64,000 bases of DNA from Heteronotia binoei (taxonomy: Eukaryota). The first letter of the stretch is position 1. The number at the start of each line of letters is the position of its first letter. The notes beneath the pieces were generated by a model. That model was not told the origin of the DNA. It ran no database searches and saw nothing but the letters and a program-made list of their open reading frames with translations. The DNA is taken from NCBI RefSeq assembly GCF_032191835.1, contig NC_083240.1:18290001-18354000 (forward strand), in the 5' to 3' direction. The position numbers were made by a program, and so were the translations under genes. Of the stretch, positions 1-27,095 are shown one piece after another.

Positions 1-610
1 TACCATTATGCCTGCCAACACCTTTCCTGGTATCCTCCATGTGTTTTAGACTGTGGGCGGGACCAAGAGGGGCTTTTACCCAGCACTCCTTCTGACTGGC
101 CATTGGTGATTTAATTGGCATTGCAGATTTTTAAAAATGTTTTGGCAACAGCTGCTACCACTAGGGTTGCCAGGTCTCCTCACCCATCTGGCAGGGGGGA
201 TTTGGGATTTCCATGGGTGAACGAGGGCGTCAAGCAACATCCCTGATGTGCTGACATCACCTGAAAGTGATGTCATTGTGTTGGGAATGTCGCTCAGGGG
301 ACACTCTGGTTTTTGAGTGAACTCTATGGATAAATTAGGCTTAAATCATAGAGTTTGCCCCAAAACCAGAGTGTCCCCCACGTGACATCTCCAACACAAT
401 TATGCTGGGTGATGTCATCGTGTTGGAGACATCACATGGCAATGTCCCTGTTTAGGGAAAGAGTTTTCCCCACCAGCCAGCTGAAATGCAGCAGACAGAA
501 GTCCCTGAAACTGGGGGATCCCTTGCTGGAACCTAGAGGCTGGCAACCCTAGCTACTGCAGTGCAAGGATCATCACTGTACAGCCCATGAGATCTAAGCT
601 ACCTGCTACA

Positions 611-773
611 CAATGTTCCTTCTAAGCTGCAGAGTCTTGTGAGCTATTGGCATTACAGTTGTGAGCTACTGCATAACTTAATGTGCTCTGGGGTCATCCT
701 TCCTGACCTGTGTGAGCTGGAGGCTAAAAATCTGTGAGCTAGCTCCCGCTAACTCAGCTTAGAGGGAACACTG
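611..773. mobile_element. hAT-type MITE, family A (TIR CAGTGTTCCCTCTAAGC)
   Basis: Perfect 8-bp TSD CTGCTACA. Other copies at 8493-8688, 19307-19522 (TSD CTCACAGG), 26324-26527, 45367-45555, 54097-54293. Confidence 0.85.
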
Positions 774-1246
774 CTGCTACAGCACTGCATTGCGGATAGG
801 ATTGTCAATCTCCAGGTGGGAGCTATAGATCTCCTGAAATGACAATTGCTCTCCAGACTACATAAATCAGTTGTTTATTAATTTCTTTGTTTAAAATTAA
901 AACATTTATCCCACTTCTCTGCTTCAGAAGGTGGACTGCACAGCATTATACCCTACCAAGATCCCTCCCCTCCAAACCCCACTCTTCCAAGCTGCACTCT
1001 CAGATCTTCAGGTGTTTCTAAACCTGGACTTGGCAGCCATAGGTGCAGCTGAAACGTTCACCTCCTTACTTGCCTTTCCTTTGGCCACATGTACCTAGGA
1101 GGGAGCAAGCTGTAAGGAGGAATATAGCGGAGGGAGAAAAGTGGCAGAATGGAGCCCTGATCTTTGACCCTGATCCCTATGACCCCTTCCCACATTTCAG
1201 CAAAAAAGCACATCTGAGAATCCAATTACACTTAAGCTGCCCTGAT

Positions 1247-1972
1247 CTAGATGGCCCAGGCTAGCCCAATCTTGTCAGATCTCAGAAGCTAAGCAGGGTT
1301 GGCCCTGGCTAGTTCTTCGATGGGAGACCAGGAAGGAAGTCCAGGGTTGTTGCGCAGAGGCAGGCATTGGCAAGCCACCTCTGTTCAAGTCTTCTTGAAA
1401 ACCTGCCAGGGCTGTGATAGCGACCATTTGCCTCTAGTCCTAAAAACTGATTTACAAGAGCTAGACGTGCATTACGGTAAATCCCATAACACTAGACTAA
1501 AACCAACAGATGGCCCTAGCTATAATCGCTCTAGATGGACATCTTCATTGGAAAGGAGGATGGGGGTCTTTTTTTGTCCTCTGAGTCCGTTAATAACACC
1601 CTTCACCGATTGGTGAATGTAGTCTATTGATACCCGCCTAGAGGAATATAATCTAATTTCAAGGGAGATACAGAAGGAATTGAAAACCAAAGAACCGGCG
1701 CACACAAACCATGGTTTGATGCAGAATGTAAAAGGGCAAAGTATACCCTTAATGTTAACTATGCAAAATATAGAACTAACCCCGAAGCAACATCCATAAT
1801 AGCTTTAAAACACCAAAAAGCCCAATATAAGGCCCTCTTTAGAAGAAAGAAACAGGAAGACATTCTGGCTTCTTGGGAGGAACTTTGGAAGGCAGTTAAA
1901 GAAAAAAACTCAGTATTATTCTGGAACTTAGTCTCTCTCTTCCAGGGCTGCCAAAAAGTGGGCTGCAACTTT
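1247..1972 (+). mobile_element. 5S rRNA-derived SINE (5S-Sauria-like), interrupted by the LINE fragment
   Basis: GATCTCAGAAGCTAAGCAGGGTTGGCCCTGGCTAGTTCTTCGATGGGAGACC matches the 5S rRNA internal control region, followed by an RTE/Bov-B-like tail (GGCAAGCCACCTCTG...GAAAACC). Confidence 0.7.
1415..1941 (+). mobile_element. Internal LINE ORF2 fragment (end of APE endonuclease plus linker), frameshifted
   Basis: Encodes SDHLPLVL (APE C-terminal SDH motif) and KPWFDAECKRAK...YKALFRRKKQ...WEELWK...FWNLV. Flanked by CCAGGGCTG at 1406-1414 and 1942-1950; absent at the paralogous site (~17410). Confidence 0.75.
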
Positions 1973-1996
1973 CCGCCACCTAAGAATAGCCTTTGT

Positions 1997-2015
1997 GTGA
2001 GATAATAAGCAGGTG
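1997..2015 (+). promoter_or_regulatory. Candidate pancreatic PTF1-type element (E-box CAGGTG with adjacent GTGAGA TC-like box), copy 1
   Basis: CAGGTG at 2010-2015, conserved in copy 2 at 17477-17482 with the same spacing to GTGAGA. Acinar enzyme promoters use E-box plus TC-box sites, but the spacing here (7 nt) is not the canonical one. Confidence 0.35.
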
Positions 2016-2155
2016 TATGACCTACCTATCCGCCAATCTGGCATGCGTCATGGAAAGTGCAAATGGAGAGGCACCTATTGGCACACGAGAAGACTCAGTT
2101 TTAAACATCTCCCTAATGATGGTGATAACTTGGGCAGCAATAAACTCTCTGAGGA

Positions 2156-2161
2156 TATAAA
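2156..2161 (+). promoter_or_regulatory. TATA box of elastase copy 1
   Basis: TATAAA 49 nt upstream of the ATG, conserved in the paralogous position of copy 2. Confidence 0.8.
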
Positions 2162-2204
2162 GTGAATTGACAGAGAGTTGCTCTCAGCACTTTTGCACTC
2201 AACA

Positions 2205-5200
2205 ATGATCCAGGTCCTCTTCACTGCTCTTGCGTTGGCCTCTGCGGGTACGATGCCGACATATCATAAGTGAGAGGAAATATTATTGTTCATGCAATGT
2301 GCAATTCACTTCTGGGATCTATTGCTCCCACAAGAGATAGCTCATTCCTATGATAAATGGCTTTTTAAAAAAGACTAAAGGGAACTTTCTGGAGGCACTG
2401 CTGTTCGACAGCTATTAGCCATGATAGCCAAAAGTTGAACCTCTTTGGATAGAGGTAGTGTACCTCTGAGTGTTTTATACAAAGGACAAGGAACATCACT
2501 GTCTACTTCTTGGGGCATCTGCCCACTATTGAGGACTCACTTCTGGACAGGATGGAATGTGGCCCAATCCTGCAAATCTATGTGGGAGTGCCTCTATGGA
2601 TTGACAACCTGTTGGTTAGACATCATTTTGATTCATATTCTACCTGCGCAGGAACAGAGCATGGGGGCTGCAGAAAGGGAGAAATGGGTGCAAAAAGGAG
2701 AGTTGTTCAGTAGGAAGTGAGATTATTGAGACCCTGGAGAGCCGCTGCCAGTCTGAGTAGACAATACTGACTTTGATGGACCCAAGGTCTGATTCAGTAT
2801 AAGGCAGCTTCATATCTGCAGCTAAAATCCAAAAAATTCATCCTTGTTGGTGGGCTACTTGTAGCATCTGTGCCATTCATTGACTACCTGTAGCTCAGTT
2901 CTTTTGGCCACCTTTGTTCTTACAAGCCACTTAAAATGGCTCAAGGAAGCTCTTGAAGACCTGTGAAAGAGATGCTATTGATATACACCACTGTTTATAC
3001 CAGGAGAAATGTTGCTGTTTCCCATTGCACATCAGGCATTTAATGCTGCTTTGCTGGTGCAGACGTGGCTGACTCTGCCTTATTCAAGATAGTTGGGGCC
3101 GGGGGGGGGGGGGGGACCTGTTATTTTCAGCCCCTGAACTCCAGCAGTAGCCACCAGAGATCATTAACGGGAGTGGAGGGGAGAGAGACCCAAGCTAGAG
3201 AAGAGGCAGTTTGCATAAGCCTTGTACATAGGTTGCAAATAAATACAAATCTAATAAATATATGTATAGTTCTCAAAAATGCTCATATTTGTCTTGTGTC
3301 ACTTGCAGCTTTGGGGTGTGGGGTGCCAACCTACAAGCCCAACTTGTCCAGAGTTGTGGGGGGAGAGAATGTCAAACCCAACAGCTGGCCCTGGCAGGTA
3401 AGTAACCATCTCTCAATCCTGGCAAGAGGGGTTTCCGTCTCCCTGTTCCTTGTGATTTGCCAGATGAAAAGTAGGCAGAGTTTTTACATGTCTAGTGCAG
3501 TATGTCATTTTTAGAACTATCCTCTGTCACCTAACTATATCTGTGTTGTTTTATGTGGGAGGGTATGAGCTTTTCAGTAACTCAGAAAGCTTATCCCCCT
3601 GCCACAAATTTTGTTAGTCTTTAAGGTGCTACTGCACTCTTGCTCTTTTCTGCTGCTACAGACAAACATGGCTACCCATCTTGTGTTTTTGTTGTGACCT
3701 GCGCCCAAAGGCATGTGCCATCAGAGTTTAATAGACTTGTACAAAAATATCCATATATTGAATGTAAGGAGTTCAAAATTATGGGATTGATACTCCCAGC
3801 CAGGCCTCACTGTCCATCCACTGAAGGATATTTGAATTTTAACGGTAACAAAGCTTTCAAAGGATAAAATGTTGGTATCACCATTTGGATCCACCGTTTC
3901 ACATCTGAAACGGCAGTACAAACATTGCACCTCAGAATTCAAAATATCACTACTTGTCACATGTTCCTTGAGGATGTTGATATTAGAGTGGATTGGGATA
4001 TGAAATTAGGGTTGCCAAGTCCAATTCAAGAAATATCTGGGACTTTGGGGGAGGAGCCTGGGGACTTTGGAGGTGGAGCCAGGAGACATTGGGGTGGAGC
4101 CAGGAGCAAGGTTGTGACAAGCATAATTGAACTCCAAAGGAAGTTCTGGCCATCACATTTAAAGGGACGGCACACCTTTTAAATGCCTTCCCTCCACTGG
4201 AAATAATGAAGGATGGGGCACCTTCTTTAGGGGCTCATAGAATTGGACCCCCCTAGTCCAATCCTTTTGAAACTTGGAGGGTGGTTTGGGGAGAGGCACC
4301 AGATGCTATGCTGAAAATCTGGTGCTTTTACCTCAAAAGACAGCCCCCCCCAGAGCCCCAGGTACCTGCAGATCAATTCTCCATTAAACCCTATGGGAAT
4401 CGGTTTCCATAGGGAATAACGGCGTGTGCAACAGGCATTTGTCTCCCCTCCCGCTGCTTTCTGATGACCCTAAAGTGGGCCTCCAAACCGAGGGATCCCC
4501 TGCCCCCACCTGGGGATTGGCAACTCTATACGTAATTGTTGCACCCTGTCAAATTGTTTGATTATGTGTCAGATTCTGATGGATATTTAAGTTCACTGCA
4601 AAGGCTGTGACTACATATTATCAAAATACCTATAGGAGCTTCCCACCTACCCCAAACAGTGAGAATTCCAGTGAGTATCTTGGAAATGTTAATTTTATGT
4701 ATCAGTTTACAAATGGAACATCCAATAGGCTACAAAAGTACACAGCAAAACCTCTTCCTGCTTCATATCTCCCACTTTTTTTCTCAGACAGCATCCAATC
4801 CTCACAGCCACCATTTGCCCCTCCTGCTTCCAGTCCAACTAAACTCCTAGCTCTGGCCCCACTTTCGTTATATATGAACTACTTCTCTGACCTTCCCACT
4901 ACCTTGGTTAGTGACAGTTCCCCAAGGCTGGAGGGAGAGAGATTTCCAGGGCATTAAAGAAAATATCCTCAAGCAATTAAGGAATGTTTAATATTCTTTT
5001 GTCAAGTTCCTACCTGCCCGTTTGTCTGACAGGCAAGAACCAGAACAATGGTTTTCATGGGAACTGAGACAGCAAAACATGAGGCTATTAAATATTATTG
5101 CACATCAACTATCAGATGCTGTCAAATATAGTCTGTCAGGTTTCAAATATTGAAATGAAATGTCAAAGCCAGACGTTGTAGGTTGTTGAATATCAGTATC

Positions 5201-8200
5201 TAGCTTGTTTGGTCTGAGGTCTGGACGTCTCAAGCTACAAGCCCTCTGCTTGAATTTGGTGGTAACGTGACTTGGGTGCAGTGCACAGACAGTGTAGTGT
5301 AGTGGTTAAGAGATTGGGGAGACTCAAATTCAACCCCTCACTCTGTTATGGAAGCTTGTTGGGTAATCCAGAGCAAGTCCCTCTCATTACATCTACATCA
5401 CAGAGGTTTTTTTGTGAGGATAAAACGGGGAAGTAAAGAATGTTCTAAGCCACTGTGGCTTCCCATTAGAAAGAATATAGTGGTTTAACTAGCTAAATAA
5501 AATTAACAAGGTGATATACTCAACTTTCAAGGCTGATCATATGACTTCTCTGATTTCCAGGCCTCTCTCCAGTACAGTTCCAGTGGCAACTGGCGTCACA
5601 CATGCGGGGGGACCCTCATAGCTACCAACTGGGTCATGACAGCAGCTCACTGCATCAGGTACATACATGGGGGGATTCTTCAAGTCCAGAGACAGAAAAC
5701 AGAGCCAGAAAACAGAAGCCCTTTCTACACTCAACTTTGATCAAGATTTAATGAGCACCTAATACACCTGCTACAAATTCGCATCATCTAATTGCTTCTA
5801 CATCCAAAAATTTGCTCCTCGCTTTTTTGAAGTTTCAGTTCTGTTGCAACTTGGGGAAGTTTGAAAATTCCAAATACGGATGAGTCTGAATTACTCGTTT
5901 TCCAAATGCCACTTCAGTATCCAAGCAAAAATATTAGGTGAGAGAGATGGAATTCTGGGATATATGACAAATTTTTTTTAGCATTTTTTTTAACGAGGAC
6001 AATTTTTAATAATGAAACTAGGCATATAATCTACCTATGTATGAAAAATGTAGATCCCTTTCTGGAATGCGTATTTTCCAAATTTTTTTGCCCGCTGGAC
6101 TGGTCCACTAGGGAAACATGTTTTTTGGGGGATTTTCTCTCTAAGGTGACTGGTTTGGCATCCACGCCATCAACTAATTTCCTTGTTACCTGCTTGAACA
6201 CATAAAGCTGCCTTCTACTGAATCAGACCTTGGTCCATCAAAGTCAGTATTGTCTACTCAGACTGGCAGTGGCTCTCCAGGGTCTCAAGCTGAGGTTTTT
6301 CACGCCTACTTGCCTGGACCCTTTTTAGTTGGAGATGCCGGGGATTGAACCTGGGACCTTCTGCTTACCAAGCAGATGCTCTACCACTGAGCCACCGTCC
6401 CTCCGCATTAAATTTAAGTGATTGTGCTTTTCATTGTGAAGGATGAGATGTGGAATTGTAGAAGTGATGGAATGGTGCCATAGGGTTGCCAATTCCAGCT
6501 TGGGGGATTCCTGGAGATTTGGTGATGGTGCCTGAGGGCAGGTCGCTCAGGAGAGCTGTGATGCCACTTTGCCTGCTTTCTGAAGCAACCATTTGCTCCA
6601 GGGGAACTGATTTCTGTAGTGTGGAGATCAGCTGCAAATCCTAGAGAACTCCTGGCTGATTATATGAAGGATTTTTTAAAAAATCAAACTGTAAGACCAG
6701 ATGGCAAAATATAAGCTCTGTCAGCCCCAATGGTCATGTTTCAAGGTGACAAGGAGTACAAGGCAGCGTGAAACTATGCAGAAGGGAGTTGGCTTGATTC
6801 TGACTAGCTGAGATCATCAGCGACAGGGGAACCAGTCAGAAGGCTGGTTTTGGTATTGATTAACTCAGACATCTGAATTCAGATGGCCAGTGCAGACCTG
6901 ACTGATCTCTGGCTGTTTTTTTGTCCTGTGCTTTCTTCAGCTCTTCTAAAACCTACCGTGTGCAGCTCGGGAAGTACGACCTGACAGTCAGTGAGAAAGG
7001 ATCCGTCACAGTGTCTCCCAAAAAGATTGTGGTGCACCCCAAATGGGACTCGAGCAAAGTTTCTGACGGGTATTTTGACAGTTTTTCTTGAAAAGGATAA
7101 AGATTAAGATTGCTGTTCCCTTCCCTTTGACCTCTGGGTTGGCAGGCAGAATATTTTGGAGTCAAATGGAGTTTTTGGAGTATCATCCGCTCATGTGCAC
7201 TTGTTCAGCCTGCAGATTAATGTGCTCACTTCCAGCACACTGTTTCTCATACGGGAGGTTGCAAAGTGCTAAGGCCTGCATTCTACACTAGAAGGGTCAG
7301 TTGACTGTACCCAATAATCCCAGCCCCACAGGGCCACAGCCAACAGTCCCAGCTAGGTGGTCCTCCTGCTACATTCTTGGGCACACAAAACATGAACCTA
7401 CCTTATACTGAATCAGACTCTTGGCCCATCAAGTTCAGTATTGTCTACTTGAACTGGCAGCAGCTCTCCTGGGTCTCAGGTGGAAGTCTTTCACATCACC
7501 TGCTACCTGATCCTTTTAACTGGAGATGCTGGGGATTGAACCTGGGACCTTCTGTGTGCCACACAGATACTTTACCACTGAGCCGTAGTCACAATGTAAT
7601 GGATGGTTTGATTCAGAGTGTTTGTGTGTGTGCATCTCTGTGCACATCCTCTACAGTCGAGATATCTCCGTCCTATCTAGATAACTAGAGAAAGGGGCTG
7701 AAACTTCACAGATGGCAATGCTAGTTACACAATTTGAATGGTGTGTTGAAAAGACAAACCAAGTCCTCCTGGAAAGTCAGAATAAGGACAGTGACTGAAA
7801 AAGGGGACAGTAAACACTGTAACTTGTGTATTCAATACTCTGTCTTTCTCTTCTCCCAACTGAAACTAGGAATGACATTGCGATGATCAAACTCTCAGAG
7901 CACGTCACCTTGAGTGACAAAATCCAGCTGGCGTGCCTGCCCCCAGCCAACAAGATCTTATCTGGAAACTCTGCTTGTTATGTGACGGGCTGGGGAAGGC
8001 TGGAAAGTAAGGAAGCATCATTTTTTTCCCCTGTTGTCCTTCTTTATTTGTGATCGGTGCTGTCTACTTGTGGTGCTTTCCCTTGCCTTGTGGTAAGCGG
8101 ATCACTCAGTACGAGCGGCAGACTCTAGGGCAGCTGTCTATCAAAAAACCCTACCAGGGAGCTTTTATATTCTCAAAAGGAGAATGGCTGTTAGTATCTC

Positions 8201-11200
8201 CTTCTCTTCCTGGTAGCCTTTGATGCATCTTGAATGGTGGTTTATTTTTTATTTTATTAGATTTGATTCATGGGCCGCCCTTCCCTGCGAATAGCGCATG
8301 GGGCAACTTACAGCAATAGATGTGCAATACATCATTTAAATTAAAAACAACATTAAAACTGAGTTCAAGTAAAAAGCATTTCCCATTACAATATGGCGGG
8401 GAAAAGTTACAGTTCCTGAGCCTCCTAGGGGTATTTTAGGAGGTGGGGGAGAGTATGAAAGCGCCAGACTGTATGCTGAGCTGACCCGCCACCAATGTTC
8501 CCTCTAAGCTACAGAGTCTTTGTAGCTACTGGTATTAAAGTTATGAGCTACTGGCAATAAAGTTGTGAGTTACTGCCTAAATTATTGTGCTCAGGAGCCA
8601 GTTTTCCTGAGCTAAGACAAAAATGTGTAAGCTGGAGGCTAAAAATCTGTGAGCTAGCTCACGCTAACTCACCTTAGAGGGAACACTGCCCGGCGCTATC
8701 CTCAACCGAATGCCTGGCAGAACATGTCTGCTTTACATGCCCTGCCAAAAGGTAGTAAATCCACTACACCTAAGACCACCTACTCTAACTTAATCAACAT
8801 ATTAAAGTGCTTGCATGCTCTGTGCCTCGCCCCCCAGTCCCATCTACCAGACGTTCTCTGGGAGTTCCATACTTGGAACTGAATCCCATGTTGTGCGGCG
8901 GCCTGATTTGGATCAGGACCACAGGGAGCTTTGAGAAGAGATTTAAGCCCTTCCCTTGTGTGGTCTTCCCAACCTGAAATGGATGCCCAAAGGATTGCTG
9001 TTTGCCCTGCTGCCAAAATGTATGGATACTCCTCCATATTGCATGACTGGACCTAAAGTCTCTTGGGTTTGGACTCTTCACAGCGAACGGCGCATCTCCA
9101 AAAGTCCTCCAGCAAGGGTGCCTCCTGGTGGTGGATCACGCAACCTGCTCCAAGTCCAGCTGGTGGGGCAGCACAGTAAAAACCAGCATGGTCTGCGCGG
9201 GCGGTGATGGCATCATATCTAGCTGCAACGTGAGTATCATCTGGTTTGGGAAGGAATCCCAAATCTGCAACTAGGAAGCTCATGTTTATCAACAGGGCTC
9301 AGGCATGCCAAAAGAACCAGCTTTGCACTGGATTATTTCCTAGGCACGGCTTGAGCTGCTACATTTCCCCCTGATTTTGAGAAATAACCAAGTATCCTCC
9401 TACAGTGGAAGATTCTGAATGGGAGCTCCCTGCAGACACAAAGGCAGTGCTTCCTGGGGGAATATGAAGCACCTCTTGCTCCAAAGAGATGGAGGGGAAA
9501 GGTCATGGTTCAGTGCTCAGAACTGAAGGCTTCTGACCCGTCCTGAATGTTGAAAAGAGTTCTGTTTGGATTTAGAGTATTTGCAAATTGGCCATTTTCC
9601 AAGTTAGGTTTTTTTATTAATAAGTTAATGTCAGTTTGGATACTTTGTCTCCATCCCCGTTCTACTTTAGTTAAAGTGCTAAAGTAAGCATTTCTACTTG
9701 GAAGTGAATTCTATGGAGTTCAATAGGACTGTCTTGCTGGTACGTGTGCAAAGAATTGCAGCCTGTGTGACCATCTAGAGCAGGGAACTGCAATGTGGTG
9801 CTTGTGGGCACCATGTTGCCAGTCACCACCTTTCCTGGGCCCACCAGGTGTTTTCAGAAAGTGGACTGGGCCAGTTGCAGTTGCTATCCAGGAGGGCTTC
9901 TGATTGACTATGCAGATCAGGGCTACAGCTAGGTGGGGCTGTAGGGGCGGCACCCCCTCTCATATCTGCCAGACAAATCTCTCCTGATTCCCCAATTCCT
10001 CCTCTCCTCTTCTTTATGCTTCGTTAATTAAATTAGCATCCCCCAGTGCTCCCTCCAGAAAAAAAAAAAAATCCTAGATACGGGCCTGGTGCAGACTGAA
10101 AGGCATCCTGTTCAACAGGGTTTCTGTCTTAAATCTTGAAGAATTGCTGAGCGTCAAGCAATAGCCTTGCTGCCATTTTGTGGCAGGCTCTACTTCCTGC
10201 AGCATCCATTTTGTTGTTGTGCCCACCACTCCGTGTCAGAATTCCAAACGCGCCCACAGGCTCAGAAAGACCCCTGATTTAGAGCACCAGTTCACTGGGG
10301 TTGCCACAGTGAGATGAGATGTGGGCTTTTCTGTCTCTCTACAAGCCGTTCCACTGCTCAAAAATGACAGGGGGCCTAAAGGGACTGTGTGCAGAAACTA
10401 CATTCAGTTGGGTTTGTTTGCAGGGGGACTCTGGCAGTCCGCTCAACTGCAAGTCCGGTAGCAAGTGGGAGGTGCACGGGGTGGCCAGTTTCGTCTCTTC
10501 TAAGGGATGCAACTACTACCACAAGCCCTCTGTTTTCACTCGAGTCTCTGCTTTCAATGACTGGATCGCTCAGGTAAGCTCTTGCGCCGTGTCACTCAGG
10601 GAGGGGGCTGATTGCTTGCGAGTTCACATAGATGCAATTTCAAGAGTGTTTTAGCTGCAAAAATCCTCAAGAGATGGGGAGAATCCCCTTCCTAGCAGGG
10701 CGCAGCTACAGCCCCCAGGGCTGGGTCAAGCTTTTCCCGTCTGCCTGCTGTGGCTCTGGAAAACCATCCAGTACAGCAGGGATCTCTAAGATAGTGCCCG
10801 CTTACCCTTTTCCTGGTACCCACCAAGTGTTTTTAGGAAGTAGGCCTTCTTGTGAGTAAAAATGATGGAGGAGAGGTTGCCAACTCTGGGTTCAGAAATT
10901 CCTGGAGATGTGAGGGTGGAGCCTGAGAAGATGGGGTTTAGGATGGGGAGGGATCTTCCACCTTCCAAAGCAGTTATTTCCTCGAGGAGAAGTGGAATAA
11001 ATGTTTGAAATTATAATATAATGCGTTCAATGCAAGGAGGAGACGCGGTTGCAGTGATCATAGCCCTCTTTATTCGTTACAGCATGGTAACGTGCAAACT
11101 AGAAGACTGATTTACTGAGCCAATGGGGCCCACTATATACAGTTCAAGGTTCCCCACGCTAGGACGCCATTGGATCATTTAAATCAGCAGGAGGCCTGTG

Positions 11201-11709
11201 ATTGGAGCAGGGATTTGGATCCTACTGCCCATTGTTCCTGGGTCCCCAAGCTCCGATCTAAAGGCTCCAATGAGCCAGGCAGGAACACGAATAATGGCAG
11301 CATCAATACACATACAGAAGAGAAATAAACCAAAAAGAAATAAAACAAAGTTTGAGTCCAGAGACACCTTTAAGAGCAACAAAATTTAATTATGGATACA
11401 ACCTTTCACATGCATGCATACTTCAGATATCTGAAGTCTACATGCACATGGAAGCTTATACCCAACTTTTTTCTGTCGCTTCAGACTAACCCAACTACTG
11501 ACCTAGGGAAAAAAAAAAAAGAAATCTATGTAGTTGGGACAAAGATTGTAATTCCAAGACATCTCCAGCTGACACCTGGAGGATGGCAACCCTAAGTAAG
11601 CTACTTTGGGTCCCCCACGGAGAGAAAAGCAGGGTATGAATGAAACAAATAAACATCACTTTGTCCTTTCTCTCTTTTAAATGCTCTATAGGTGATGCAA
11701 AAATATTAA
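2205..11709 (+). CDS. CELA2A: Chymotrypsin-like elastase family member 2 (pancreatic elastase-2), tandem copy 1; 269 aa preproenzyme, 8 coding exons
   Basis: Exons 2205-2247, 3309-3397, 5561-5658, 6941-7069, 7870-8006, 9084-9229, 10424-10573, 11692-11709 (810 nt, all GT-AG, frame continuous). Signal peptide [14 protein letters not shown], propeptide [15 protein letters not shown]|VVGG, triad TAAHC / NDIA / GDSGSP, then [14 protein letters not shown], end VMQKY*. Length and exon phases match elastase-2 as I recall it; orthology to human CELA2A versus CELA2B is not resolvable (lineage-specific duplicate). Confidence 0.93.
4007..4528. mobile_element. MITE with TAGGGTTGCCA TIRs (probably hAT)
   Basis: TAGGGTTGCCA...TGGCAACTCTA, copy-1 specific. 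A related element at 162-551 and many fragments (about 6481, 10875, 20629, 26127, 34117, 35115). Confidence 0.7.
6201..6403 (-). mobile_element. tRNA-headed SINE (second family)
   Basis: Head GGGACGGTGGCTCAGTGGTAGAGCATCTGCTTGGTAAGCAGAAGGTCCCAGGTTCAATCCCCGG, body GAGACCCTGGAGAGCCACTGCCAGTCTGAGTAGACAATACTGAC. Related copies at ~2727-2812(+), 7395-7590(-), 22140-22335(-), 57050-57240(-), 61108-61310(+). Confidence 0.8.
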
Positions 11710-11758
11710 CCTACGGAGCACTATTCAACGCTGAGATCTGGTTGGTGACATCATCAAA

Positions 11759-11764
11759 AATAAA
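11759..11764 (+). terminator. Polyadenylation signal of elastase copy 1
   Basis: AATAAA 50 nt after the stop codon, conserved in copy 2. Confidence 0.75.
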
Positions 11765-12486
11765 ACCAGCTGTGGAACAAACAAAAAAGAAAAACATAAA
11801 TAAAGTAACCAACACCCTAAGTCCGCAGAAGTCTGTCTGTAACTCCTTGGTTTTACTCTTACGGTGTTATTAGGCAGAGATGCTTAAGAACACACTAGTC
11901 GCCACTGATGTTTCTTTTCTGGCTTTTTAAAAGATGTTGAGCAGAATGCAACATGGGAAATGGTCAGCTGCAATTCAGACGAGGAGCCTCAAAATTCCAG
12001 AAAGGCGTTTTATTAAGTTCTTCCAAAAAGTTGCAAGTTTGACGATTAGTTTGTGCTTTGATGATGAGAGATCTATTTGTTTGTTTGTTGTAGTACACCT
12101 TTCTCATCAGAACTCAAGGCAGATCACATAGAGTTAGTCAATACAATTGATGAATGGGAAATTCAACAAATGCAATAGAATTAGGGTTGTAGATCCAACC
12201 AGAAGTCTAAAAAGAGAATTGAAACTGGTTGACTTGATGGCACCTGGGTTTTGGGCATTATGTGACACTGAGCGTTGGGCTGGATGGGCCATTGGTCTGA
12301 TCCAACATGGCTTCTCTTTATGTTCTTATGTTTGAAAGTATTAACACAACACATTAAATGATGCAAAATTCCATGGATGGATCCCACTTTCAACTAGCTA
12401 TGTACAGCCATATAGACCACAGTCCCTAAAAATATTCTAGATAACATTGTGAACCATTTAGAACACTGCAAGCTTATAACCCACAT

Positions 12487-12767
12487 AGAAGAAGAAGAAG
12501 ATATTGGATTTATATCCCGCCCTCCACTCCAAAGAGTCTCAGAGCGGCTCACAATCTCCTTTACCTTCCTCCCCCACAACAGACACCCTGTGAGGTGGGT
12601 GGGGCTTTAAGGGTTCTCACAGCAGCTGCCCTTTCAAGGACAACCTCTGCCAGGGCTATGGCTGACCCAAGGCCATGCTAGCAGGTGCAAGTGGAGGAGT
12701 GGGGAATCAAACCCGGTTCTCCCAGATAAGAGTCCGCACACTTAACCACTACACCAAACTGGCTCTC
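12487..12767 (-). mobile_element. tRNA-derived SINE with L2-like 3' end and (CTT)n tail (common squamate family)
   Basis: Head GAGAGCCAGTTTGGTGTAGTGGTTAAG, B box GGTTTGATTCC, tail GGGATATAAATCCAATATCTTCTTC. Same family at ~15278-15530(+), 19129-19638(+), 24078-24334(-), 39129-39408(-), 49161-49453(+), 62033-62327(-). Confidence 0.8.
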
Positions 12768-15700
12768 GCAGAAAGAAAACTCTCGCAGAAAGAAAAAAAG
12801 AAACCTTTTGCAGAAAGCCAGGAGTGTCCATTCTCTAGGCTGGTCTTTCTCCTGTAAGGAAATTTCTTATTTCCATCACTTACAGGGCAGTCCAAATCAG
12901 AGTAATACCATTGACTTCAAAAGACCTAGAAAGATGTGCCTCTATTTAGGATTCCACTGTTAAACCACGATATTGTGACCGACACAAATCCCAAGCAATT
13001 GGTATTCTGCACTGCCCTGTTTCTAGAAGGCAATTGCTACATAACTGATGACACACAGGGTGACCAAACAGTGCTGTGTGGTGTATGTATTTGAAACATC
13101 CCTCGTATTAATCAGATGATCTCCAAAGGGAAACCTATGAACAGATTAAATACAATTTTTAAAATTGCTCATTGGCCCTTGGTGGCAGAGGTCATTTTAG
13201 TGTTAGTCTAGTGTAGCCATGTTAGCTGAGTGTAACAAAGCAAAATGGAAGTGCAATGGCACCTTGCAGACCAACAACATTTTGTCTAATATGAACTTTC
13301 ATGAGTCATAAGAAGGTAAGCGAAGCCATGTTGGATCAGGCCACTAGCCCATCCAGTCCAACATTCTGTTTCCTATAGTGGCCAAAACCCAGATGCCGTC
13401 AGGAGGTCCACCAGTAGGGCCAGAATTCCAGAAGTCCTCCCACTCTGGCCCCCCAAGCACCAAGAAGACAGAACATTGCTGCCCCAGACAGAGTGTTCCA
13501 TCTATACACTGTGGCTAACAGCCGTTGATGGGCCTCTGCTCCATATGTTTAATTCCCTCTTGAAGTTATGTTTGTAGCCAGCCTGCCACCACTTCCTACA
13601 GCAGCGATTCCTCTGATACAAACGGGAAGAAAGGAAATTGTTTATCTCATTTTTACACAGAAAAGGAGACCTGAATGCCCTTCCCCTTTTAGGGCAATTG
13701 GTGTTGACCAGGATTTTTGCTGATGTGTTGGGATAGACCTGTGTCTGCTCCTTACCAAGTTGATGGCGGGGGCCAGGTTGTCTTCATCTGAAGACGAAGT
13801 TCTTCCTAGGATAGCAAAGGTGTAACTTGCCTGTGGGTTGTGGATCTCTGGCCAGTGGTAAAGCCAGAAGGTCCTTTCCTTGACTTCCCCACAGCCATAA
13901 ATCCAGCTTCTGTTCCAAACCAGAAGTGTGCCAGAAAAGCAGTGAAAGTGCCTTTCCACTACAAGTTCTTAGATTTAAATTCTATACTGGCCCAGTGCCA
14001 CAATAAACCTACCTACCTACTACTACGAGCTCTCCACTGAAATTGTTCACATCCACACACACATTCCACCAAAGTTTGCTCAGCACATATAATTCTCAGG
14101 TGCCCAGTAGGCTGAATATCAAACCACTCATCCTCCAAACAGTTTTCACATTGTACACGTTTTTGATGCTGGGTTTCTGCTTGTGGGCGTTTGGGGCAGA
14201 ATGACCTTTTTTGACAACAAAAGCAACAGATCCAAATATGCCATGGAATCAGCCAATTCCACAGCTCTGAGGGATGCACACAAATTCTGACCAAGGTACG
14301 TCCTCCAGTAGAGGTAATACTGCCCCCTTATGTCTCTCATGTAACATCGTCTCTGATTTCTCACTTCTAATCTAACCTATGGCAGTGGTTCCTAGGGGCT
14401 TTTTTTGTAGTAGGAACTCCTTTGCACATTAGGACACATTAGGACACACACCCTGATGTAACCAATCCTCCTGGAGCTTACAGTAAACCCCGTACTAAAA
14501 GCCCTGTAAGCTCTTGGAGGATTGGCTACATCAGGGGGTGTGGCCTAATATGCAAAGGAGTTCCTGCTACAAAAAAGCCCTGGTGGTTCTACAACCACAA
14601 ATCCAAATTTACGTGGTAAAGCGCTGTCCCAAGGTTTTTTTGGGTGCCTTAGGCAAACTATGACCTTGGCACCCATCTATTTATCATCATCATTAGAAAC
14701 ATACAATAGATTAAAATATAAGATAAACAATTAGTTACAGATATCAATAAGGTATCATCTGAATGATCAATGATTGATGGCATGTACTGTTATTTCCCTC
14801 CATAGAGGATGGATTGTAGGCCGGATACAGTGAAGGCCGTTGCTGCGCTCAACTGTAGGCCTGGTAGAAGATCTCTGTCTAGGTCAGCATTCCATTTTCT
14901 ATAGTGCCCAAGGAGCTATTTTTGATAAACCAACACACAAAGGATGCAGTGCCTCCACTGTGAGCCCCAAGCAAGTGGGAGTTTGTCTCCTTCTCCTCTG
15001 CCGGCTGGGCCAGAGCTGGAGTTTGAGGAGGTGTGCTTGGAGGATCCTTGGTTGAGGAGATGCTTGCAGATGGCAGTGAAGAGGTTGGCATGAAGGGGTT
15101 CAGTGCTGTGCATCTTGCATGGCAGGTAGAGGGCAGTGAAGCAATGCAGGGAGCTGAGCGAGAGATTGGACTGGCAAAGGAGCAACACCAAGACAGAGCC
15201 CACCCACGCACACACCTCTTTCTGGTTTTTCCATGGCATGCTGAATAGTTCCCACCTACTCTCCAACCCTTCCCTCCAGAGAGTCAGCTGCATTGCAGTG
15301 GTTAAGAGCGGCAGACTCTAATCTGAAGAACCAGGTTTGATTTTCCACTCCTCCACATGTAGCCAGCTGGGTGATCTTGGGCCAGTCAGTTTTCTTGGAG
15401 CTCTCTCAGCCCCACCTTCCTCATAGGATGTCTGTTGTGGGGAGAGGAAGGGCAGGAGATTGTAAGCCACTCTGAGACTCCTTTGGGTAATGGACAGAGT
15501 ATAAAAACCAACTCCTACTCTTCTCTTCCTCCTCCTCCTCCTCCAGCTGTGACTGTGAAGTTACTACTAGCCAGAGGGCTTTTTTCACCTCACAAAGAGG
15601 GAGGGGGAGATGAGAATGTGAAGCTGGTGAGGAGGAAAGAAAGAGAAGGATGTGAGGAGCAGGAGCCGCTATTAGGGAGGGCTGGTCTGTGACCTACTTT

Positions 15701-17250: not shown

Positions 17251-17437
17251 CTAGATGGCCCAGGGTAGTCCAATCTTGTTGGATCTCAGAAGTTAAGCAG
17301 GGTAAGCCCTGGCTAGTTCTCAGATGGGAGACTACCAAGGAAGTCCACGTTATTCCGCAGAGACAGGCACTGACAAGCCACCTCTGTTCGGGTCTTCTGG
17401 AAAACCTGACAGGGCTGCCAAAAAGCGGGCTGCAACT
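17251..17437 (+). mobile_element. 5S rRNA-derived SINE, uninterrupted paralogous copy
   Basis: GATCTCAGAAGTTAAGCAGGGTAAGCCCTGGCTAGTTCTCAGATGGGAGAC plus the same tail. Confidence 0.7.
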
Positions 17438-17627
17438 TTCCACCGCCTAAGAATAGCCTTTGTGTGAGAGAATAAGCAGGTGTAAGACCTACCTATCAGC
17501 CAATCTGGCATGCCCCATGGAAAGCGGAGATGGAAAGGAGCCTATCAGCACACAACAGGCCAAGGCTTGGTTTTAAACTTCTCCGTAATGATGATGACAA
17601 CTTGGGCAGGGATAAACTCCCTGAGGA

Positions 17628-17678: not shown

Positions 17679-20600
17679 ATGATCCGGGTCCTCTTCGCTG
17701 CTCTTGCGTTGGCCTCTGCGGGTACGATTCCAACATATCATAAGCGAGAGGAAATATTATTTTTCTTGCAGTACACAATTAGCTTCTGGGATCCATTGCT
17801 GCTACAAGATATAGTGATGCTCACTCTTAATGACTTTAAAAAAAAAAGCTTAGAGGGAACTTTCTGGAGGCTCAGTTGTTCAACAGCTATTAGCCATGAT
17901 AGCCAAAAGTTGAACCCTATTGGATGGAGGTAGTGTACCTCCGAATGTCACATACAAGGGACAAGCAGCACCTCCACATTCTGCTTCTTGGGGCATCTCC
18001 CCGCTGTTGGAGAATCATTTCTGGGCAAGATGGAGTATGGCCCGATCTTGCAAATCTGTCTGGGACTGCTTGTATGGATTGACGACCGGTTGGTTAGACA
18101 TCATTCTGACGCATAGTCTACCTGCACAGGGGGGCTGTCAAGAGTAGCTGCAGAAAGGGTTGCGAAAAGGAGACTTGTTCAGTAGGGAGTGAGATTATTG
18201 TGTTGCTAAAATAAAAGAAACTTAGCCTTGCTGCTCGGGTACTTGTAGTACCTGTGCCATGTGTTGCATACCTGTAGCTCAATTCTTTTGGCCACCTTTG
18301 TTCTTACGGGCCACTTAACATGGCTCAAGGAAGCTCTCACAGACCTGTAAAAGGGATGCTGTTGATACATACCACTGTATATACCAGGAAACATGGAGAA
18401 ATGTGGCCATTTCCCATTGCACATCAGGCATTTCATGTTGCTTTGCTGGTACAGGCAAACACATGTTGCTGACTCCGGGGAAAAACTTATTTTCAGCCCC
18501 TGAACTCTGGCAGCCATCACCAGAGATCATTAGTAGGGGAAGAAGGAGAGGAGAGACCCAAGCTAGAGTGAAAAGGCAATTTGCATAACCAAAATCTGTA
18601 ACAATATATAAGTGCCTTGTACATAAGTTGCAAATAAACAAACATCTAATAAATAGATGTATTTGATTACCACAGTCTCATAATGTGTCGTTTGCAGCTT
18701 TGGGATGTGGGGTCCCAGCCTACCAGCCCAACCTGTCTAGAGTTGTGGGGGGAGAAGCTGTCAGACCCAACAGTTGGCCCTGGCAGGTAAGTCACCATCT
18801 CTCAATCCTGGCAAGAGGGATTCCCCCCCCCCTTTTTTTTCCTTTGTGATTTGCTGAATCCAAACTAGGCAGAGTTTTTACATGTTGAGTGCAGTATGTA
18901 TTTTTAAACCTATCTGTCATCTATCCATCATCTATCTATATCTGTGTTGTTTTATGTGGCAGGGTATGAGCTTTCATGAGTCACTGTTCACTTCAGTGAC
19001 TCATGAAAGCTTGAACCCTGCGGCAGCTTTTGTTAGTCTTTAAGGTGCTACTGGAATCTTTCTCACTTTTTTACTGTTACAGACAGACTAACACGGCTTT
19101 CCATCTTGAGCTGTTTTAAGCCACTGTGGAGAGCCAGTTTGGTGTAGTGGTTGTGTGCGGACTCTTATCTGGGAGAACTGGGTTTGATTTCCCATTCCTC
19201 CACTTACAGCTGCTGGAAGGGCCTTGGGTTAGCCATAGCTCTCGCAAAATTGTCCTTGAAAGGGCAGCTTCTGGGAGAGTTCTCTCAGTCCTGTCCACCT
19301 CACAGGTAATGTTCCCTCTAAGCTGCAGAGTCTTGTGAGCAAAAATTCTACTTTATGAGCTACTGGTATTACAGTTGTGTGCTACTGACATTAAAGTTGT
19401 GAGCTACTGCATAAATTAGTGTGCTCTGGAGCCATCCTTTCTGAGCTAAGACAAAAATGTGTGAGCTGGAGGCTAAACATCTGTGAGCTAGCTCAGGCTA
19501 ACTCAGCTTAGAGGGAACACTGCTCACAGGGTGTCTGTTGTGGTGGAGGTCGGAAGATAAAGGAAATCGTGAGTTGCTCTGAGTCTCTGGTTCAGTGAGA
19601 AGGGCAGGTATAAATCTGCAGTCTTCTTCTTCTTCTTCCCATTAGAGATAAAAGAGTGGTATAAATAGCTAAATAAAATTAATATAGTCATATACTCACC
19701 TTTCGAGGCTGACTGTATGACTTGTCTCATTTCCAGGCCTCTCTCCAGTACAGTTCCAGTGGCAACTGGCGTCACACATGCGGGGGGACCCTCATAGCTA
19801 CCAACTGGGTCATGACAGCAGCTCACTGCATCAGGTACATAAATTGGGGGATTCTTCAAGTTTAGACTAGAGCCAGAATGTAATGTTGAAACTTGGGGAA
19901 GTTCGAAAATTCCAAATACGGTTGAGTTTGAATTCTTTTCTTCACAAATGCCACTTCAGTATCCAAGCAAATTTGCTAGGTGAGAGAGATGGGATTCTGG
20001 GATGTATGACAATATGTTTTTAAGTTTGTAAGATGAAGACAACTTCTAATAATGGAACTAGGCACATAATTTATGTATGAAAGTTGTAGGTTGCTTTCTG
20101 GATATTTTTCAGATATGTTTGCCCATGAACAGATCCACTAGGGAAACATGTCGGGGGTTGAGGGGGTTGGCGGTATTTTCTCTCTAACATGCAAGACTTT
20201 TTTGTAGAAAAAGCCCAGCGTGAACTCATTTGCATATTAGGCCACACCCCCTGCCATCACCATTGTTTCACACAGGGTTTTTGGGGGGAGAAAAGGCCCA
20301 GCAGGGACTCATTTGCATATTAGGCCACACCCCTTGACGTCACCATTGTTTCGCACAGGGCTCTTTTGTAGAAAAAGCCCAGCAGGGACTCATTTGCATA
20401 TTAGGCCACACACCTCCGATGCCAATCCAGCTGGAACTGTGTTCCTGTGCATTACTGCTAAAAAAAAAAAAGTCCTGTGGTAACGTGACTGGCTTGGTCA
20501 CATCAACTCATTTCCTTGTTACCTGCTTCACAAGAAATTTAAGTGATTGCGCTTTTCATCGTGCAAATTCAGTCCCAGCTTTTGAAGGACGAGATGTGGA

Positions 20601-23600: not shown

Positions 23601-23804
23601 TTAGGCTAAATGCAGGGTTATGAATGGTTATTTGTTTTTAGATGCATTGATTCTATGATTAATAATGGTTATGAATGGTTATTTGTTTTTAGATGCATTT
23701 AAATGGTCTATGTATATGTCCTTTTGTGGGTGTTGATGCGTTGGTATGTTTGTGGAAGAGCACCTCATTTCGTTGCTCTCATTTTCTGAGAACAATGACA
23801 ATAA

Positions 23805-23889
<85 letters not shown>

Positions 23890-26800: not shown

Positions 26801-27095
26801 TGCTAGAATTCCACCTCTGCCCAGAATTAAACCTTGTTGGTCTTAAAGGTGCCACTGGACCCAAACTTTGTTCTACTGACCTGAAAAAATAAATAAGAAA
26901 TCTATGCAGTTGGGACATCAGCTGTAATTTCAAGACATCTCCAGCCCCCACTGGAAGATGGCAACCCTAAGAGGAGAATGATGTAAGCCACTTGAGGTCT
27001 GTACTGAGAGAAAAGTAGGGTATAAATGAAACACATAAATATCACTTTATCCTTTCTCTCTTTTAAATGCTCTATAGGTGATGCAAAGCTATTAA
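17679..27095 (+). CDS. CELA2A: Chymotrypsin-like elastase family member 2 (pancreatic elastase-2), tandem copy 2; 269 aa, canonical S1 pocket
   Basis: Exons 17679-17721, 18698-18786, 19737-19834, 21080-21208, 22765-22901, 24350-24495, 25599-25748, 27078-27095; exon lengths identical to copy 1. Motifs SR|[37 protein letters not shown], end VMQSY*. Confidence 0.95.
19129..19638 (+). mobile_element. SINE of the same family with a nested hAT MITE
   Basis: SINE sequence is interrupted at 19307-19522 and resumes after a perfect 8-bp TSD CTCACAGG. Confidence 0.8.
21424..22017. mobile_element. hAT-type MITE (TIR CAGGGGTGTCAAAC / GAGTTCAACACCCCTG), copy-2 specific
   Basis: TIRs plus degenerate 8-bp TSD (TGCTAGGG/TTCTAGGT); empty site in copy 1 near 7270. 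Confidence 0.75.
22578..22690 (-). mobile_element. Sauria SINE / Bov-B 3' tail fragment
   Basis: Reverse complement of the tail at 50880-50970; absent in copy 1. Confidence 0.65.
23420..23887 (+). mobile_element. Rex1/Babar-type LINE 3' end with (CTAT)n tail, nested in a MITE
   Basis: Translates DLPSLVDLY...[23 protein letters not shown], the DxSHPxHxLFxxLPSGRR motif I recall from Rex1/Babar ORFs; TAGATAA repeated at 23413-23419 and 23888-23894. Confidence 0.7.
23806..23889 (+). repeat. (TCTA)n microsatellite, about 21 units
   Basis: Perfect tetranucleotide run forming the tail of the Rex1/Babar fragment. Confidence 0.95.
24078..24334 (-). mobile_element. SINE inserted 15 nt upstream of the copy-2 exon 6 acceptor
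   Basis: Same family; absent from the paralogous intron of copy 1 (9050-9083). Confidence 0.8.
26569..26648. mobile_element. Penelope-like element pseudo-LTR palindrome carrying hammerhead ribozyme cores
   Basis: 80-bp palindrome (36/40 matches); each strand reads ATAT-CTGAAGA-A-stem-GAAA-GCTT-ATAC. Flanked by GCACCTTTAAGATCAAC / GTTGGTCTTAAAGGTGC typical of these remnants. Relatives at ~3560-3670, 11350-11490, 18960-19080, 43360-43440, 43610-43700, 44060-44135, 60405-60770. Confidence 0.6.
26652..26819. mobile_element. Palindromic hAT-type MITE, family C (CAGGGGTGGAATTCTAGC / CAGGGCTTTTTTGTAGC ends)
   Basis: Perfect TSD CCCAGAAT. Relatives at 14393-14582, 20192-20477, 23299-23945, 27576-27746, 32386-32567, ~40820-40967, 49964-50145, ~53655-53843, 62713-62872, most with 7/8 TSD matches. 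Confidence 0.85.

What the first reader, a model, noticed from the sequence alone, without database searches (positions are those of the whole stretch)
10424..10510. Elastase-2 duplicate with a Gly216->Val S1 pocket (elastase-1/3-like specificity by convergence)
Seen: copy 1 reads [12 protein letters not shown] (GTC at 10493-10495) where copy 2 reads [12 protein letters not shown] (GGC at 25668-25670); residues 189/190 (ISSCN) and 226 (KPSVF) are the same in both. Established: in chymotrypsin numbering, Gly216 leaves the S1 pocket open (elastase-2 cleaves after Leu/Met/Phe), while Val216 occludes it in elastase-1 and elastase-3 (Ala/Val preference). Inference: after tandem duplication one CELA2 copy re-evolved a narrow elastase-1-like pocket on a CELA2 scaffold. 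Neighbouring changes cluster in the same substrate-binding strands (V->A before Ser214, L->K at ~218, R->H, GDSGG->GDSGS), and the reading frame, triad and activation site are intact.
Basis: partly seen in the sequence, partly recalled or inferred. Interest (0 to 1): 0.72.

Follow-up and report, generated by a model that had tools for sequence, protein, structure and literature searches.

The report
Gecko elastase-2 paralogue with Val216 pocket
One of two tandem pancreatic elastase-2 genes in this gecko genome carries the elastase-1/3-type Val216 in its substrate pocket, and this is a real, transcribed gene shared by other geckos and already annotated, not a change private to this species.

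Summary
Exon 7 of copy 1 (10424-10573) has GTC (Val) at 10493-10495. Copy 2 (25599-25748) has GGC (Gly) at 25668-25670.

- **Identity:** the window is Heteronotia binoei chromosome CM063342.1. Both copies are intact 8-exon genes, already in RefSeq as "CELA2A" (XP_060115633.1 has V216, XP_060115632.1 has G216).
- **Scaffold:** both sit inside the squamate CELA2 clade. Gene order is CTRC, V216 copy, G216 copy, CASP9.
- **Age:** the same slot holds an Ala213/Val216 copy in Paroedura picta and Eublepharis macularius. The paralogue is therefore old, certainly gekkonid and probably gekkotan. Patchy gene conversion blurs its history.
- **Convergence:** Podarcis carries a separately placed V216 CELA2-like gene. 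In 219 distinct elastase motifs, V216 never occurs with Val213, and both squamate lineages also changed position 213.
- **Function:** dN/dS is 0.16 between V-copy orthologues. Spliced RNA contigs cover exons 4-8 and read Val216.

Ser197, Lys218, His223, Cys178 and retained Ser226 are specific to Heteronotia. The specificity shift is inferred, not tested. I found no paper on this. It is a modest new variant of a known kind.

The parts
2205..2247 (+). Copy 1 (V216 paralogue) exon 1: start codon and signal peptide
   Evidence: The exon chain with GT-AG introns reproduces database protein P0276 (XP_060115633.1) exactly.
3309..3397 (+). Copy 1 exon 2: activation peptide and the SR|VVGG trypsin activation site; Lys37 is diagnostic of the V copies
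5561..5658 (+). Copy 1 exon 3: His57 (AAHC); 100% identical to exon 3 of copy 2
   Evidence: 0 differences in 98 nt; dS 0
6941..7069 (+). Copy 1 exon 4
   Evidence: the exon 4-5 joint is seen in an RNA contig of run X3.
7870..8006 (+). Copy 1 exon 5: Asp102; Ser151 is diagnostic of the V copies
   Evidence: RNA contigs in X1 and X3
9084..9229 (+). Copy 1 exon 6: Ser189/Ser190/Cys191; an extra, unpaired Cys178 (TGC at 9119-9121)
   Evidence: the X1 RNA contig reads CGC (Arg) at 9119 and the X3 contig reads T.
10424..10573 (+). Copy 1 exon 7: Ser195, Ser197 (AGT 10436-10438), Ala213 (GCC 10484-10486), Val216 (GTC 10493-10495), Lys218, His223, Ser226 (TCT 10529-10531)
   Evidence: a spliced RNA contig covers 10424-10571 with no difference at 10493-10495.
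11692..11709 (+). Copy 1 exon 8: last five codons and the stop
   Evidence: the exon 7-8 joint is seen in an RNA contig of X1.
17679..27095 (+). Copy 2 (G216 paralogue, XP_060115632.1 = P0324). Exons: 17679-17721, 18698-18786, 19737-19834, 21080-21208, 22765-22901, 24350-24495, 25599-25748, 27078-27095. Gly216 is GGC at 25668-25670.
   Evidence: All exons have the same lengths as in copy 1, with GT-AG introns and an open frame.
237..12968 (.). First unit of the tandem duplication; the second unit is about 15773-28250
   Evidence: Self-BLAST, 75-92% identity, interrupted by repeat insertions

Best explanation
Copy 1 is a functional pancreatic proelastase of the CELA2 lineage. It is the upstream member of an old tandem pair (CTRC, V216 copy, G216 copy, CASP9) that arose in geckos before Heteronotia and Paroedura split. 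It most likely arose before the Eublepharidae and Gekkonidae split. In the upstream copy two single-base changes were fixed, GTC->GCC (Val213Ala) and GGC->GTC (Gly216Val). They reproduce the residue pair found in every Val216 elastase examined. By analogy with elastase 1, the Val216 side chain partly fills the neck of the S1 pocket. After trypsin activation the enzyme should then prefer smaller aliphatic P1 residues than the Gly216 sister, which keeps the ancestral elastase-2 pocket. Gene conversion keeps homogenising parts of the two genes (exon 3, many introns), while the paralogue-specific residues persist. Shown: gene models, synteny, phylogenetic placement, shared codons, purifying selection, spliced transcripts. 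Inferred: the change of P1 preference and its adaptive value.
For: - **Identity and models:** the window equals H. binoei CM063342.1 (100% over 21,709 nt). Exons reproduce XP_060115633.1 exactly. Copy 2 equals XP_060115632.1.
- **Family:** Pfam Trypsin at 1e-66 for copy 1 and 4e-70 for copy 2.
- **Scaffold:** best solved relative is porcine elastase 2, 1BRU, at 384 bits. Chymotrypsin C scores 326, elastase 1 scores 294 and proproteinase E scores 293.
- **Tree:** the squamate CELA2 clade has 96/90 support and the gecko clade of all V and G copies has 100/100.
- **Same slot and residues elsewhere:** Paroedura and Eublepharis.
- **Shared codons:** GCC at 213 and GTC at 216 in all three V copies. 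Four residues are fixed in V copies and absent from five gecko G copies: Lys37, Ser151, Ala213, Val216.
- **Orthology of Hb1 and Pp1:** three synonymous sites are shared and the pair groups at 91/91.
- **Selection:** dN/dS is 0.16 between V orthologues, 0.10 between G orthologues and 0.20 between the paralogues.
- **Covariation:** in 219 distinct motifs all 61 Val216 sequences have Ala, Thr or Gly at 213, and 154 of 157 Gly216 sequences have Val213.
- **RNA:** spliced contigs cover exons 5-6-7-8 (X1) and 4-5-6 (X3) at 97% identity or more.
- **Role of the residues:** Val216 and Thr226 truncate the S1 pocket of elastases (PMC2930297). A pocket lined by Gly216 goes with chymase activity and one lined by Val216 with elastase activity (PMC6941018).
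Against: - No enzymology was done. The pocket effect is inferred by homology only, and no structure was modelled.
- Heteronotia keeps Ser226, so its pocket may be only partly narrowed. Val216 with Ser226 occurs in just 2 of 61 Val216 motifs.
- Heteronotia copy 1 has Ser at the almost invariant Gly197 (1 of 219 motifs) and an unpaired Cys178. Either could lower activity.
- With the 213-226 columns removed, the three V copies do not form a clade (AU p = 0.037). The Eublepharis pair groups together at 97/99. A single origin across Gekkota therefore rests on synteny and four non-synonymous sites.
- The RNA evidence is Logan contigs. It shows presence and splicing, but not level or tissue.
- Expression of copy 2 was not examined.
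Confidence: 0.68

Rival explanations
1. Val216 does not change specificity much. With Ser226 retained, copy 1 remains an elastase-2-like enzyme preferring Leu/Met (or has an intermediate preference). The pair is kept for dosage or regulatory subfunctionalisation.
For: Ser226, Ser189 and Ser190 are unchanged. The overall scaffold is CELA2. The combination Val216/Ser226 is rare, so its behaviour cannot be read off known enzymes.
Against: Val216 alone accounts for the larger share of the pocket truncation in elastases: 43 cubic angstroms against 31 for Thr226 (PMC2930297). The coupled V213A change, conserved in three geckos and paralleled in Podarcis, points to selection on the binding site. The other gecko V copies went on to Thr226.
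Confidence: 0.2
2. The V216 copies of Eublepharis and of gekkonids arose by separate tandem duplications with parallel V213A and G216V changes, rather than from one ancestral gekkotan duplication.
For: Eublepharis V and G copies are sisters at 97/99 and at 98/94 without the trait columns. The AU test rejects a V-copy clade at p = 0.037. No synonymous site supports the V trio. Podarcis shows that the change can recur.
Against: Order and orientation are identical in three species, CTRC then V copy then G copy then CASP9. Four shared diagnostic residues include two outside the pocket, Lys37 and Ser151. Gene conversion is demonstrably active: exon 3 is identical, and intron sites give 239 species-pattern against 47 and 48 for the alternatives. 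Per-exon dS between Hb1 and Hb2 ranges from 0 to 0.79. Such conversion would produce exactly this within-species clustering.
Confidence: 0.25
3. Copy 1 of Heteronotia is a decaying or catalytically impaired copy, like human CELA2B (as I recall it), on its way to pseudogenisation or to a non-proteolytic role.
For: Gly197Ser occurs in 1 of 219 motifs. The reference has an unpaired Cys178. V copies carry more private substitutions than G copies: 12 against 9 in Heteronotia and 20 against 8 in Paroedura.
Against: Frame, triad, activation site, ten conserved cysteines and all splice sites are intact. dN/dS is 0.16. The copy is conserved in three species across an old split. Spliced transcripts exist. 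Cys178 is Arg in another Heteronotia library. From memory, not checked here, human neutrophil elastase also has GDSGS.
Confidence: 0.07
4. A recent duplication private to this species, or an assembly or base-calling error at 10494.
For: The two copies are 75-92% identical, introns included.
Against: Orthologous V copies with the same codons exist in Paroedura and Eublepharis. Copy 2 groups with Euleptes rather than with copy 1. Exon 6 dS between the copies is 0.79, above the between-species value of 0.45. An RNA contig confirms the codon.
Confidence: 0.02

Closest known systems
Pancreatic elastase 2 (CELA2A; porcine elastase II, PDB 1BRU)
   Same: Best sequence match (384 bits). Same clade. 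Same synteny between CTRC and CASP9. Same exon structure. Ser189, Ser190 and Ser226, the NYY-KPSVF loop and the trypsin activation site are all shared.
   Different: Val216 and Ala213 replace Gly216 and Val213. In Heteronotia there are also Ser197, Lys218, His223 and Cys178.
Pancreatic elastase 1 and elastase 3 / proproteinase E (CELA1, CELA3; PDB 1C1M, 1PYT_C, 1FON)
   Same: Val216 paired with a residue other than Val at 213. Thr226 is present in the Paroedura and Eublepharis orthologues.
   Different: Not the same lineage: 285-294 bits against 384 for elastase 2, and outside the CELA2 clade. Heteronotia keeps Ser226.
Fish and coelacanth 'elastase 3-like' proteins (P0314, P0315, P0317, P0319)
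   Same: The motif IASFVSG with Ala213, Val216 and Thr226, on proteins 61-64% identical to copy 1.
   Different: A deep, separate branch at the base of the CELA2/CTRC-like group in the tree. They are not orthologues of the gecko copy.
Podarcis 'CELA2A' XP_028596396 / XP_053257975 (P0284, P0326)
   Same: A squamate CELA2-clade paralogue with Val216, Thr226 and a smaller residue at 213 (Gly).
   Different: It lies between CTRC and EFHD2, in the opposite orientation to CTRC. It is a separate clade, and the AU test rejects union with the gecko V copies at p = 0.028. It is most likely an independent origin.
Chymase-family proteases whose pocket residues 189/190/216/226 set chymase or elastase activity
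   Same: The same principle: a pocket lined by Gly216 goes with chymase activity and one lined by Val216 with elastase activity (PMC6941018).
   Different: Haematopoietic granule proteases, not pancreatic zymogens, at a different locus.

Membership tests
Chymotrypsin-fold serine protease (Pfam PF00089, MEROPS S1) | Trypsin-domain profile match over the full domain | tested here: met
   PF00089 at 1.2e-66 (copy 1) and 4e-70 (copy 2), profile positions 1-220 of 220.
Chymotrypsin-fold serine protease (Pfam PF00089, MEROPS S1) | Catalytic triad His57/Asp102/Ser195 and the zymogen activation site Arg15|Val16 | tested here: met
   AAHC (His at residue 74), NDIA (Asp at 122), GDSG (Ser at 217) and SR|VVGG, in both copies.
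Chymotrypsin-fold serine protease (Pfam PF00089, MEROPS S1) | Conserved disulphide cysteines | tested here: met
   Ten cysteines at identical positions in all six gecko proteins. Copy 1 has an eleventh at residue 178.
CELA2 (pancreatic elastase 2) | Phylogenetic placement inside the CELA2 clade | tested here: met
   Squamate CELA2 clade at 96/90 and gecko clade at 100/100, nested in tetrapod CELA2.
CELA2 (pancreatic elastase 2) | Conserved genomic neighbourhood CTRC - CELA2 - CASP9 - DNAJC16 | tested here: met
   Called genes in L002, L001, L006 and L007. The window aligns to the Paroedura CASP9 and DNAJC16 stretches.
CELA2 (pancreatic elastase 2) | Open S1 pocket: Gly216 with Ser226 (and Val213) | tested here: not met
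   Copy 1 has Val216 and Ala213, with Ser226 kept. Copy 2 meets this feature.
CELA2 (pancreatic elastase 2) | Cleavage after medium or large hydrophobic P1 residues (Leu, Met, Phe, Tyr) | not testable with these tools
   Needs enzyme kinetics.
CELA1/CELA3-type elastase | Val216 with a residue other than Val at 213 | tested here: met
   Ala213 and Val216. The covariation holds in 61 of 61 Val216 motifs.
CELA1/CELA3-type elastase | Thr226 | tested here: not met
   Ser226 (TCT) in Heteronotia. Thr (ACT) in the Paroedura and Eublepharis V copies.
CELA1/CELA3-type elastase | Descent from the CELA1 or CELA3 lineage | tested here: not met
   Lower scores to elastase 1 and proproteinase E than to elastase 2. 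The tree places it in CELA2.

The most novel reading that the evidence does not exclude
Squamates have repeatedly turned spare CELA2 duplicates into small-P1 elastases: at least once in geckos (tandem copy beside CTRC) and once in lacertids (inverted copy between EFHD2 and CTRC). Each time this went through an obligatory coupled change at 213 and 216, usually followed by Ser226Thr. It may fill the niche of CELA1/CELA3-type enzymes that these lineages lack or express weakly. In geckos, selection on four paralogue-specific residues holds the pair apart against ongoing gene conversion.
Probability: 0.3. Interest if true: 0.55.

Novelty: new variant of a known kind. Interest (0 to 1): 0.38.

Why it matters
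This is a natural, replicated experiment in protease specificity. The textbook Gly216-to-Val switch, together with a compensating change at 213, was fixed on an elastase-2 scaffold, and the unchanged sister gene sits next door. Comparing the two gecko enzymes, the Paroedura and Eublepharis versions with Thr226, and the independent Podarcis version would show how much each of residues 213, 216 and 226 contributes to P1 selectivity in a native background. It would also show how divergent residues survive gene conversion. Practically, automated annotation labels all these genes "CELA2A", which hides a likely functional difference. The finding is not a new kind of system.

Tried and rejected
- **Representative search with exon 7 alone.** It returned mostly multi-domain mis-predictions and exon-sized fragments. 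It was useful only for the residue census.
- **First homologue search, seeded with a primate protein.** It was swamped by mammals. The squamate set came only after re-seeding with the Pogona and then the Heteronotia proteins. The gecko paralogues came from cluster look-up.
- **Import of the Val216 strand by conversion from CELA1, CELA3 or the neighbouring CTRC.** Rejected: only two single-base differences separate the strand from the G copies, the flanking NYY-KPSVF context is CELA2-type, and the CTRC next door has Gly216.
- **Intron quartets to date the duplication.** An unrooted quartet with Hb1 and Hb2 together cannot separate conversion from independent duplication. I therefore used outgroup-polarised residues and synonymous sites instead.
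- **Structure prediction.** Not run. The tools return no coordinates from which a pocket volume could be measured, so it would not have tested the claim.
- **Joined spliced models.** The database proteins P0276 and P0324, identical to the exon translations, served as references. Exon-wise counts were summed without joining. One local script walked the exons in memory, only to verify that they reproduce P0276.
Full report
**Observation.** The sequence reads as described. Exon 7 of copy 1 is window 10424-10573. It is preceded by AG, followed by GT, and holds 50 codons. GTC at 10493-10495 encodes the residue that aligns with Gly216 of porcine elastase 2. Exon 7 of copy 2 is 25599-25748, with GGC at 25668-25670. 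Both copies read ISSCN and KPSVF. A self-comparison shows a tandem duplication, about 237-12968 against 15773-28250, at 75-92% identity and broken up by repeat insertions.

**Identity of the locus.** A Heteronotia binoei protein named chymotrypsin-like elastase family member 2A (P0276, XP_060115633.1) matches every exon of copy 1. Its genomic locus is 100% identical to the window over 21,709 nt, so the window is CM063342.1 of GCA_032191835.1.

An exon walk with GT-AG introns reproduces P0276 exactly: 2205-2247, 3309-3397, 5561-5658, 6941-7069, 7870-8006, 9084-9229, 10424-10573 and 11692-11709. Copy 2 has eight exons of identical lengths, from 17679 to 27095. It corresponds to XP_060115632.1 (P0324).

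Both are full Trypsin-domain proteins. Each has the triad, the SR|VVGG activation site and ten conserved cysteines. Upstream lies a CTRC-like gene with Gly216. Downstream the window aligns to the Paroedura CASP9 and DNAJC16 stretches.

**Which elastase it is.** Full-length copy 1 scores 384 bits against porcine elastase 2 (1BRU). It scores 326 and 315 against chymotrypsin C, 294 and 286 against elastase 1, and 293 and 285 against proproteinase E. In a 46-protein maximum-likelihood tree, all squamate "CELA2A" proteins form a clade at 96/90 within tetrapod CELA2. The seven gecko proteins form a clade at 100/100. At the DNA level only GTC to GCC at 213 and GGC to GTC at 216 distinguish the strand from the G copies. 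This excludes import of a foreign tract.

**Age of the paralogue.** The duplicate is not private to this genome.
- Paroedura picta has the order [V216 gene, 273 aa] then [G216 gene] then CASP9 then DNAJC16.
- Eublepharis macularius has CTRC then [V216 gene] then [G216 gene] then CASP9.
- All three V copies use GCC at 213 and GTC at 216.
- Four residues are fixed in the V copies and absent from five gecko G copies: Lys37, Ser151, Ala213 and Val216.
- Heteronotia and Paroedura V copies also share three synonymous states, in exons 4, 6 and 7, and group at 91/91.
- Copy 2 groups with the Euleptes G copy rather than with copy 1 (99/84).

Against a simple picture, the Eublepharis pair groups together at 97/99. 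After removing the 213-226 columns, an AU test rejects a clade of the three V copies at p = 0.037. Intron sites favour the within-species grouping, 239 against 47 and 48. Synonymous divergence between the Heteronotia copies ranges from 0 (exon 3) and 0.16 (exon 5) to 0.79 (exon 6). The between-species values are 0.43-0.45.

This mosaic is what patchy gene conversion on an old duplicate produces. I therefore favour one duplication in an early gekkotan ancestor. It is firm for Gekkonidae and about 75% likely for Gekkota as a whole.

**Recurrence and coupling.** Podarcis species carry another "CELA2A" with Gly213, Val216 and Thr226. It lies between CTRC (opposite strand) and EFHD2. Lacerta agilis has the ordinary G216 gene beside CASP9. 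The Podarcis clade does not join the gecko V copies (AU p = 0.028).

Of the 157 Gly216 sequences, 154 have Val213. Of the 61 Val216 sequences, 59 have Thr226. Both squamate lineages thus made the coupled 213/216 change. Heteronotia is unusual in having Ser226 (TCT), where the other gecko V copies have ACT.

**Is it functional?** dN/dS is 0.16 between V-copy orthologues, 0.10 between G-copy orthologues and 0.20 between the paralogues. This indicates purifying selection, somewhat relaxed in the V copy. V copies also carry more private substitutions.

Three RNA libraries of one 2024 metatranscriptomic study hold 6-7% of the words of the gene, about the exon share. Laid at 97% identity or more, run X1 gives a 469-nt contig joining exons 5, 6, 7 and 8 at the annotated junctions. 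Within a few letters it shows no difference at 10493-10495. Run X3 gives a contig joining exons 4, 5 and 6. Copy 2 is only about 88% identical in these exons, so it cannot be the source.

The run ids are coded. The pattern of three libraries from two organisms fits the pooled liver viromes of H. binoei and H. planiceps (PMC11160328), but that link is my guess. Contigs say nothing about expression level or tissue.

**Heteronotia-specific oddities.** Ser197 occurs in 1 of 219 motifs. The RNA contig cannot confirm it, because the codon lies too near a piece end. Cys178 (TGC at 9119-9121) is an eleventh, unpaired cysteine. The X1 contig reads CGC (Arg) there, while X3 agrees with the window. Lys218 and His223 are also private.

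**Mechanism.** Established knowledge is that Val216 and Thr226 truncate the S1 pocket of elastases (PMC2930297). A pocket lined by Gly216 goes with chymase activity and one lined by Val216 with elastase activity (PMC6941018). By inference, copy 1 has a narrower pocket neck than copy 2 and should prefer smaller aliphatic P1 residues. With Ser226 the narrowing may be incomplete. This step is not shown here.

**Novelty and verdict.** Both genes are already in RefSeq under the generic name CELA2A. Three literature searches found no description of a Val216 CELA2 paralogue in reptiles. The 227-nt block that includes the exon's flanks is 91.6% identical.

The finding is real and correctly read in outline, but it is an old, conserved, annotated paralogue rather than a species-specific innovation. 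It follows a well-known specificity rule. Its interest lies in the replicated 213/216 coupling and in the persistence of the paralogue-specific residues under gene conversion.

Noticed in passing
window 5561-5658 vs 19737-19834: Exon 3 is 100% identical between the two paralogues (0 of 98 nt, dS 0). The 227-nt block that includes its flanks is 91.6% identical, so all the mismatches lie outside the exon. Per-exon dS between the copies ranges from 0 to 0.79, a mosaic pointing to short gene-conversion tracts.
   Followed up: partly
window 9119-9121: Copy 1 has an extra, unpaired cysteine (Cys178, TGC). The other five gecko proteins compared have Arg there. One RNA library (X1) reads CGC (Arg) and another (X3) reads T like the assembly. 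The state is therefore polymorphic or lineage-restricted within Heteronotia.
   Followed up: partly
window 10436-10438: GDSGS: Ser replaces the nearly invariant Gly197 (1 of 219 distinct elastase motifs). It is private to Heteronotia copy 1 and is not verifiable from the RNA contig, because it lies too near a piece end.
   Followed up: partly
L005 10001-18776 (Podarcis raffonei CM049757.1): Podarcis species have a separate CELA2-clade gene with Gly213, Val216 and Thr226. It lies between CTRC (opposite strand) and EFHD2, and looks like an independent origin of a Val216 pocket from a CELA2 duplicate.
   Followed up: partly
window 6330-6401 (- strand), with related copies near 7387-7584, 22137-22329, 57046-57223, 61106-61311: A tRNA-like element (Rfam tRNA, 52 bits) sits in intron 3 of copy 1, inside a roughly 200-nt dispersed repeat. 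It is probably a tRNA-derived SINE. RNA contigs pile up on it and on two other intronic repeats (7350-7549, 8550-8749) at very high summed depth.
   Followed up: partly
window 35357-35653: A 67-nt tandem repeat, 4.4 copies at 97% identity, in the stretch that aligns to the Paroedura CASP9 gene.
   Followed up: no
window 23805-23889 and 20206-20415: An (ATCT)21 microsatellite and an 83-nt tandem repeat of 2.6 copies, both in introns of copy 2.
   Followed up: no
window ~29600-42700 (- strand) and ~44800-47400 onward (+ strand): These stretches align to the Paroedura CASP9 (CARD plus Peptidase_C14) and DNAJC16 genes. They show the conserved order CTRC, CELA2 pair, CASP9, DNAJC16.
   Followed up: partly
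P0322 (Gekko kuhli KAL8198570.1, 521 aa): The Gekko kuhli G216 elastase-2 is annotated as a 521-residue fusion. Its first 260 or so residues are a normal CELA2, followed by unrelated low-complexity sequence. It is flagged UNVERIFIED_CONTAM by the source and is probably a gene-model error.
   Followed up: no
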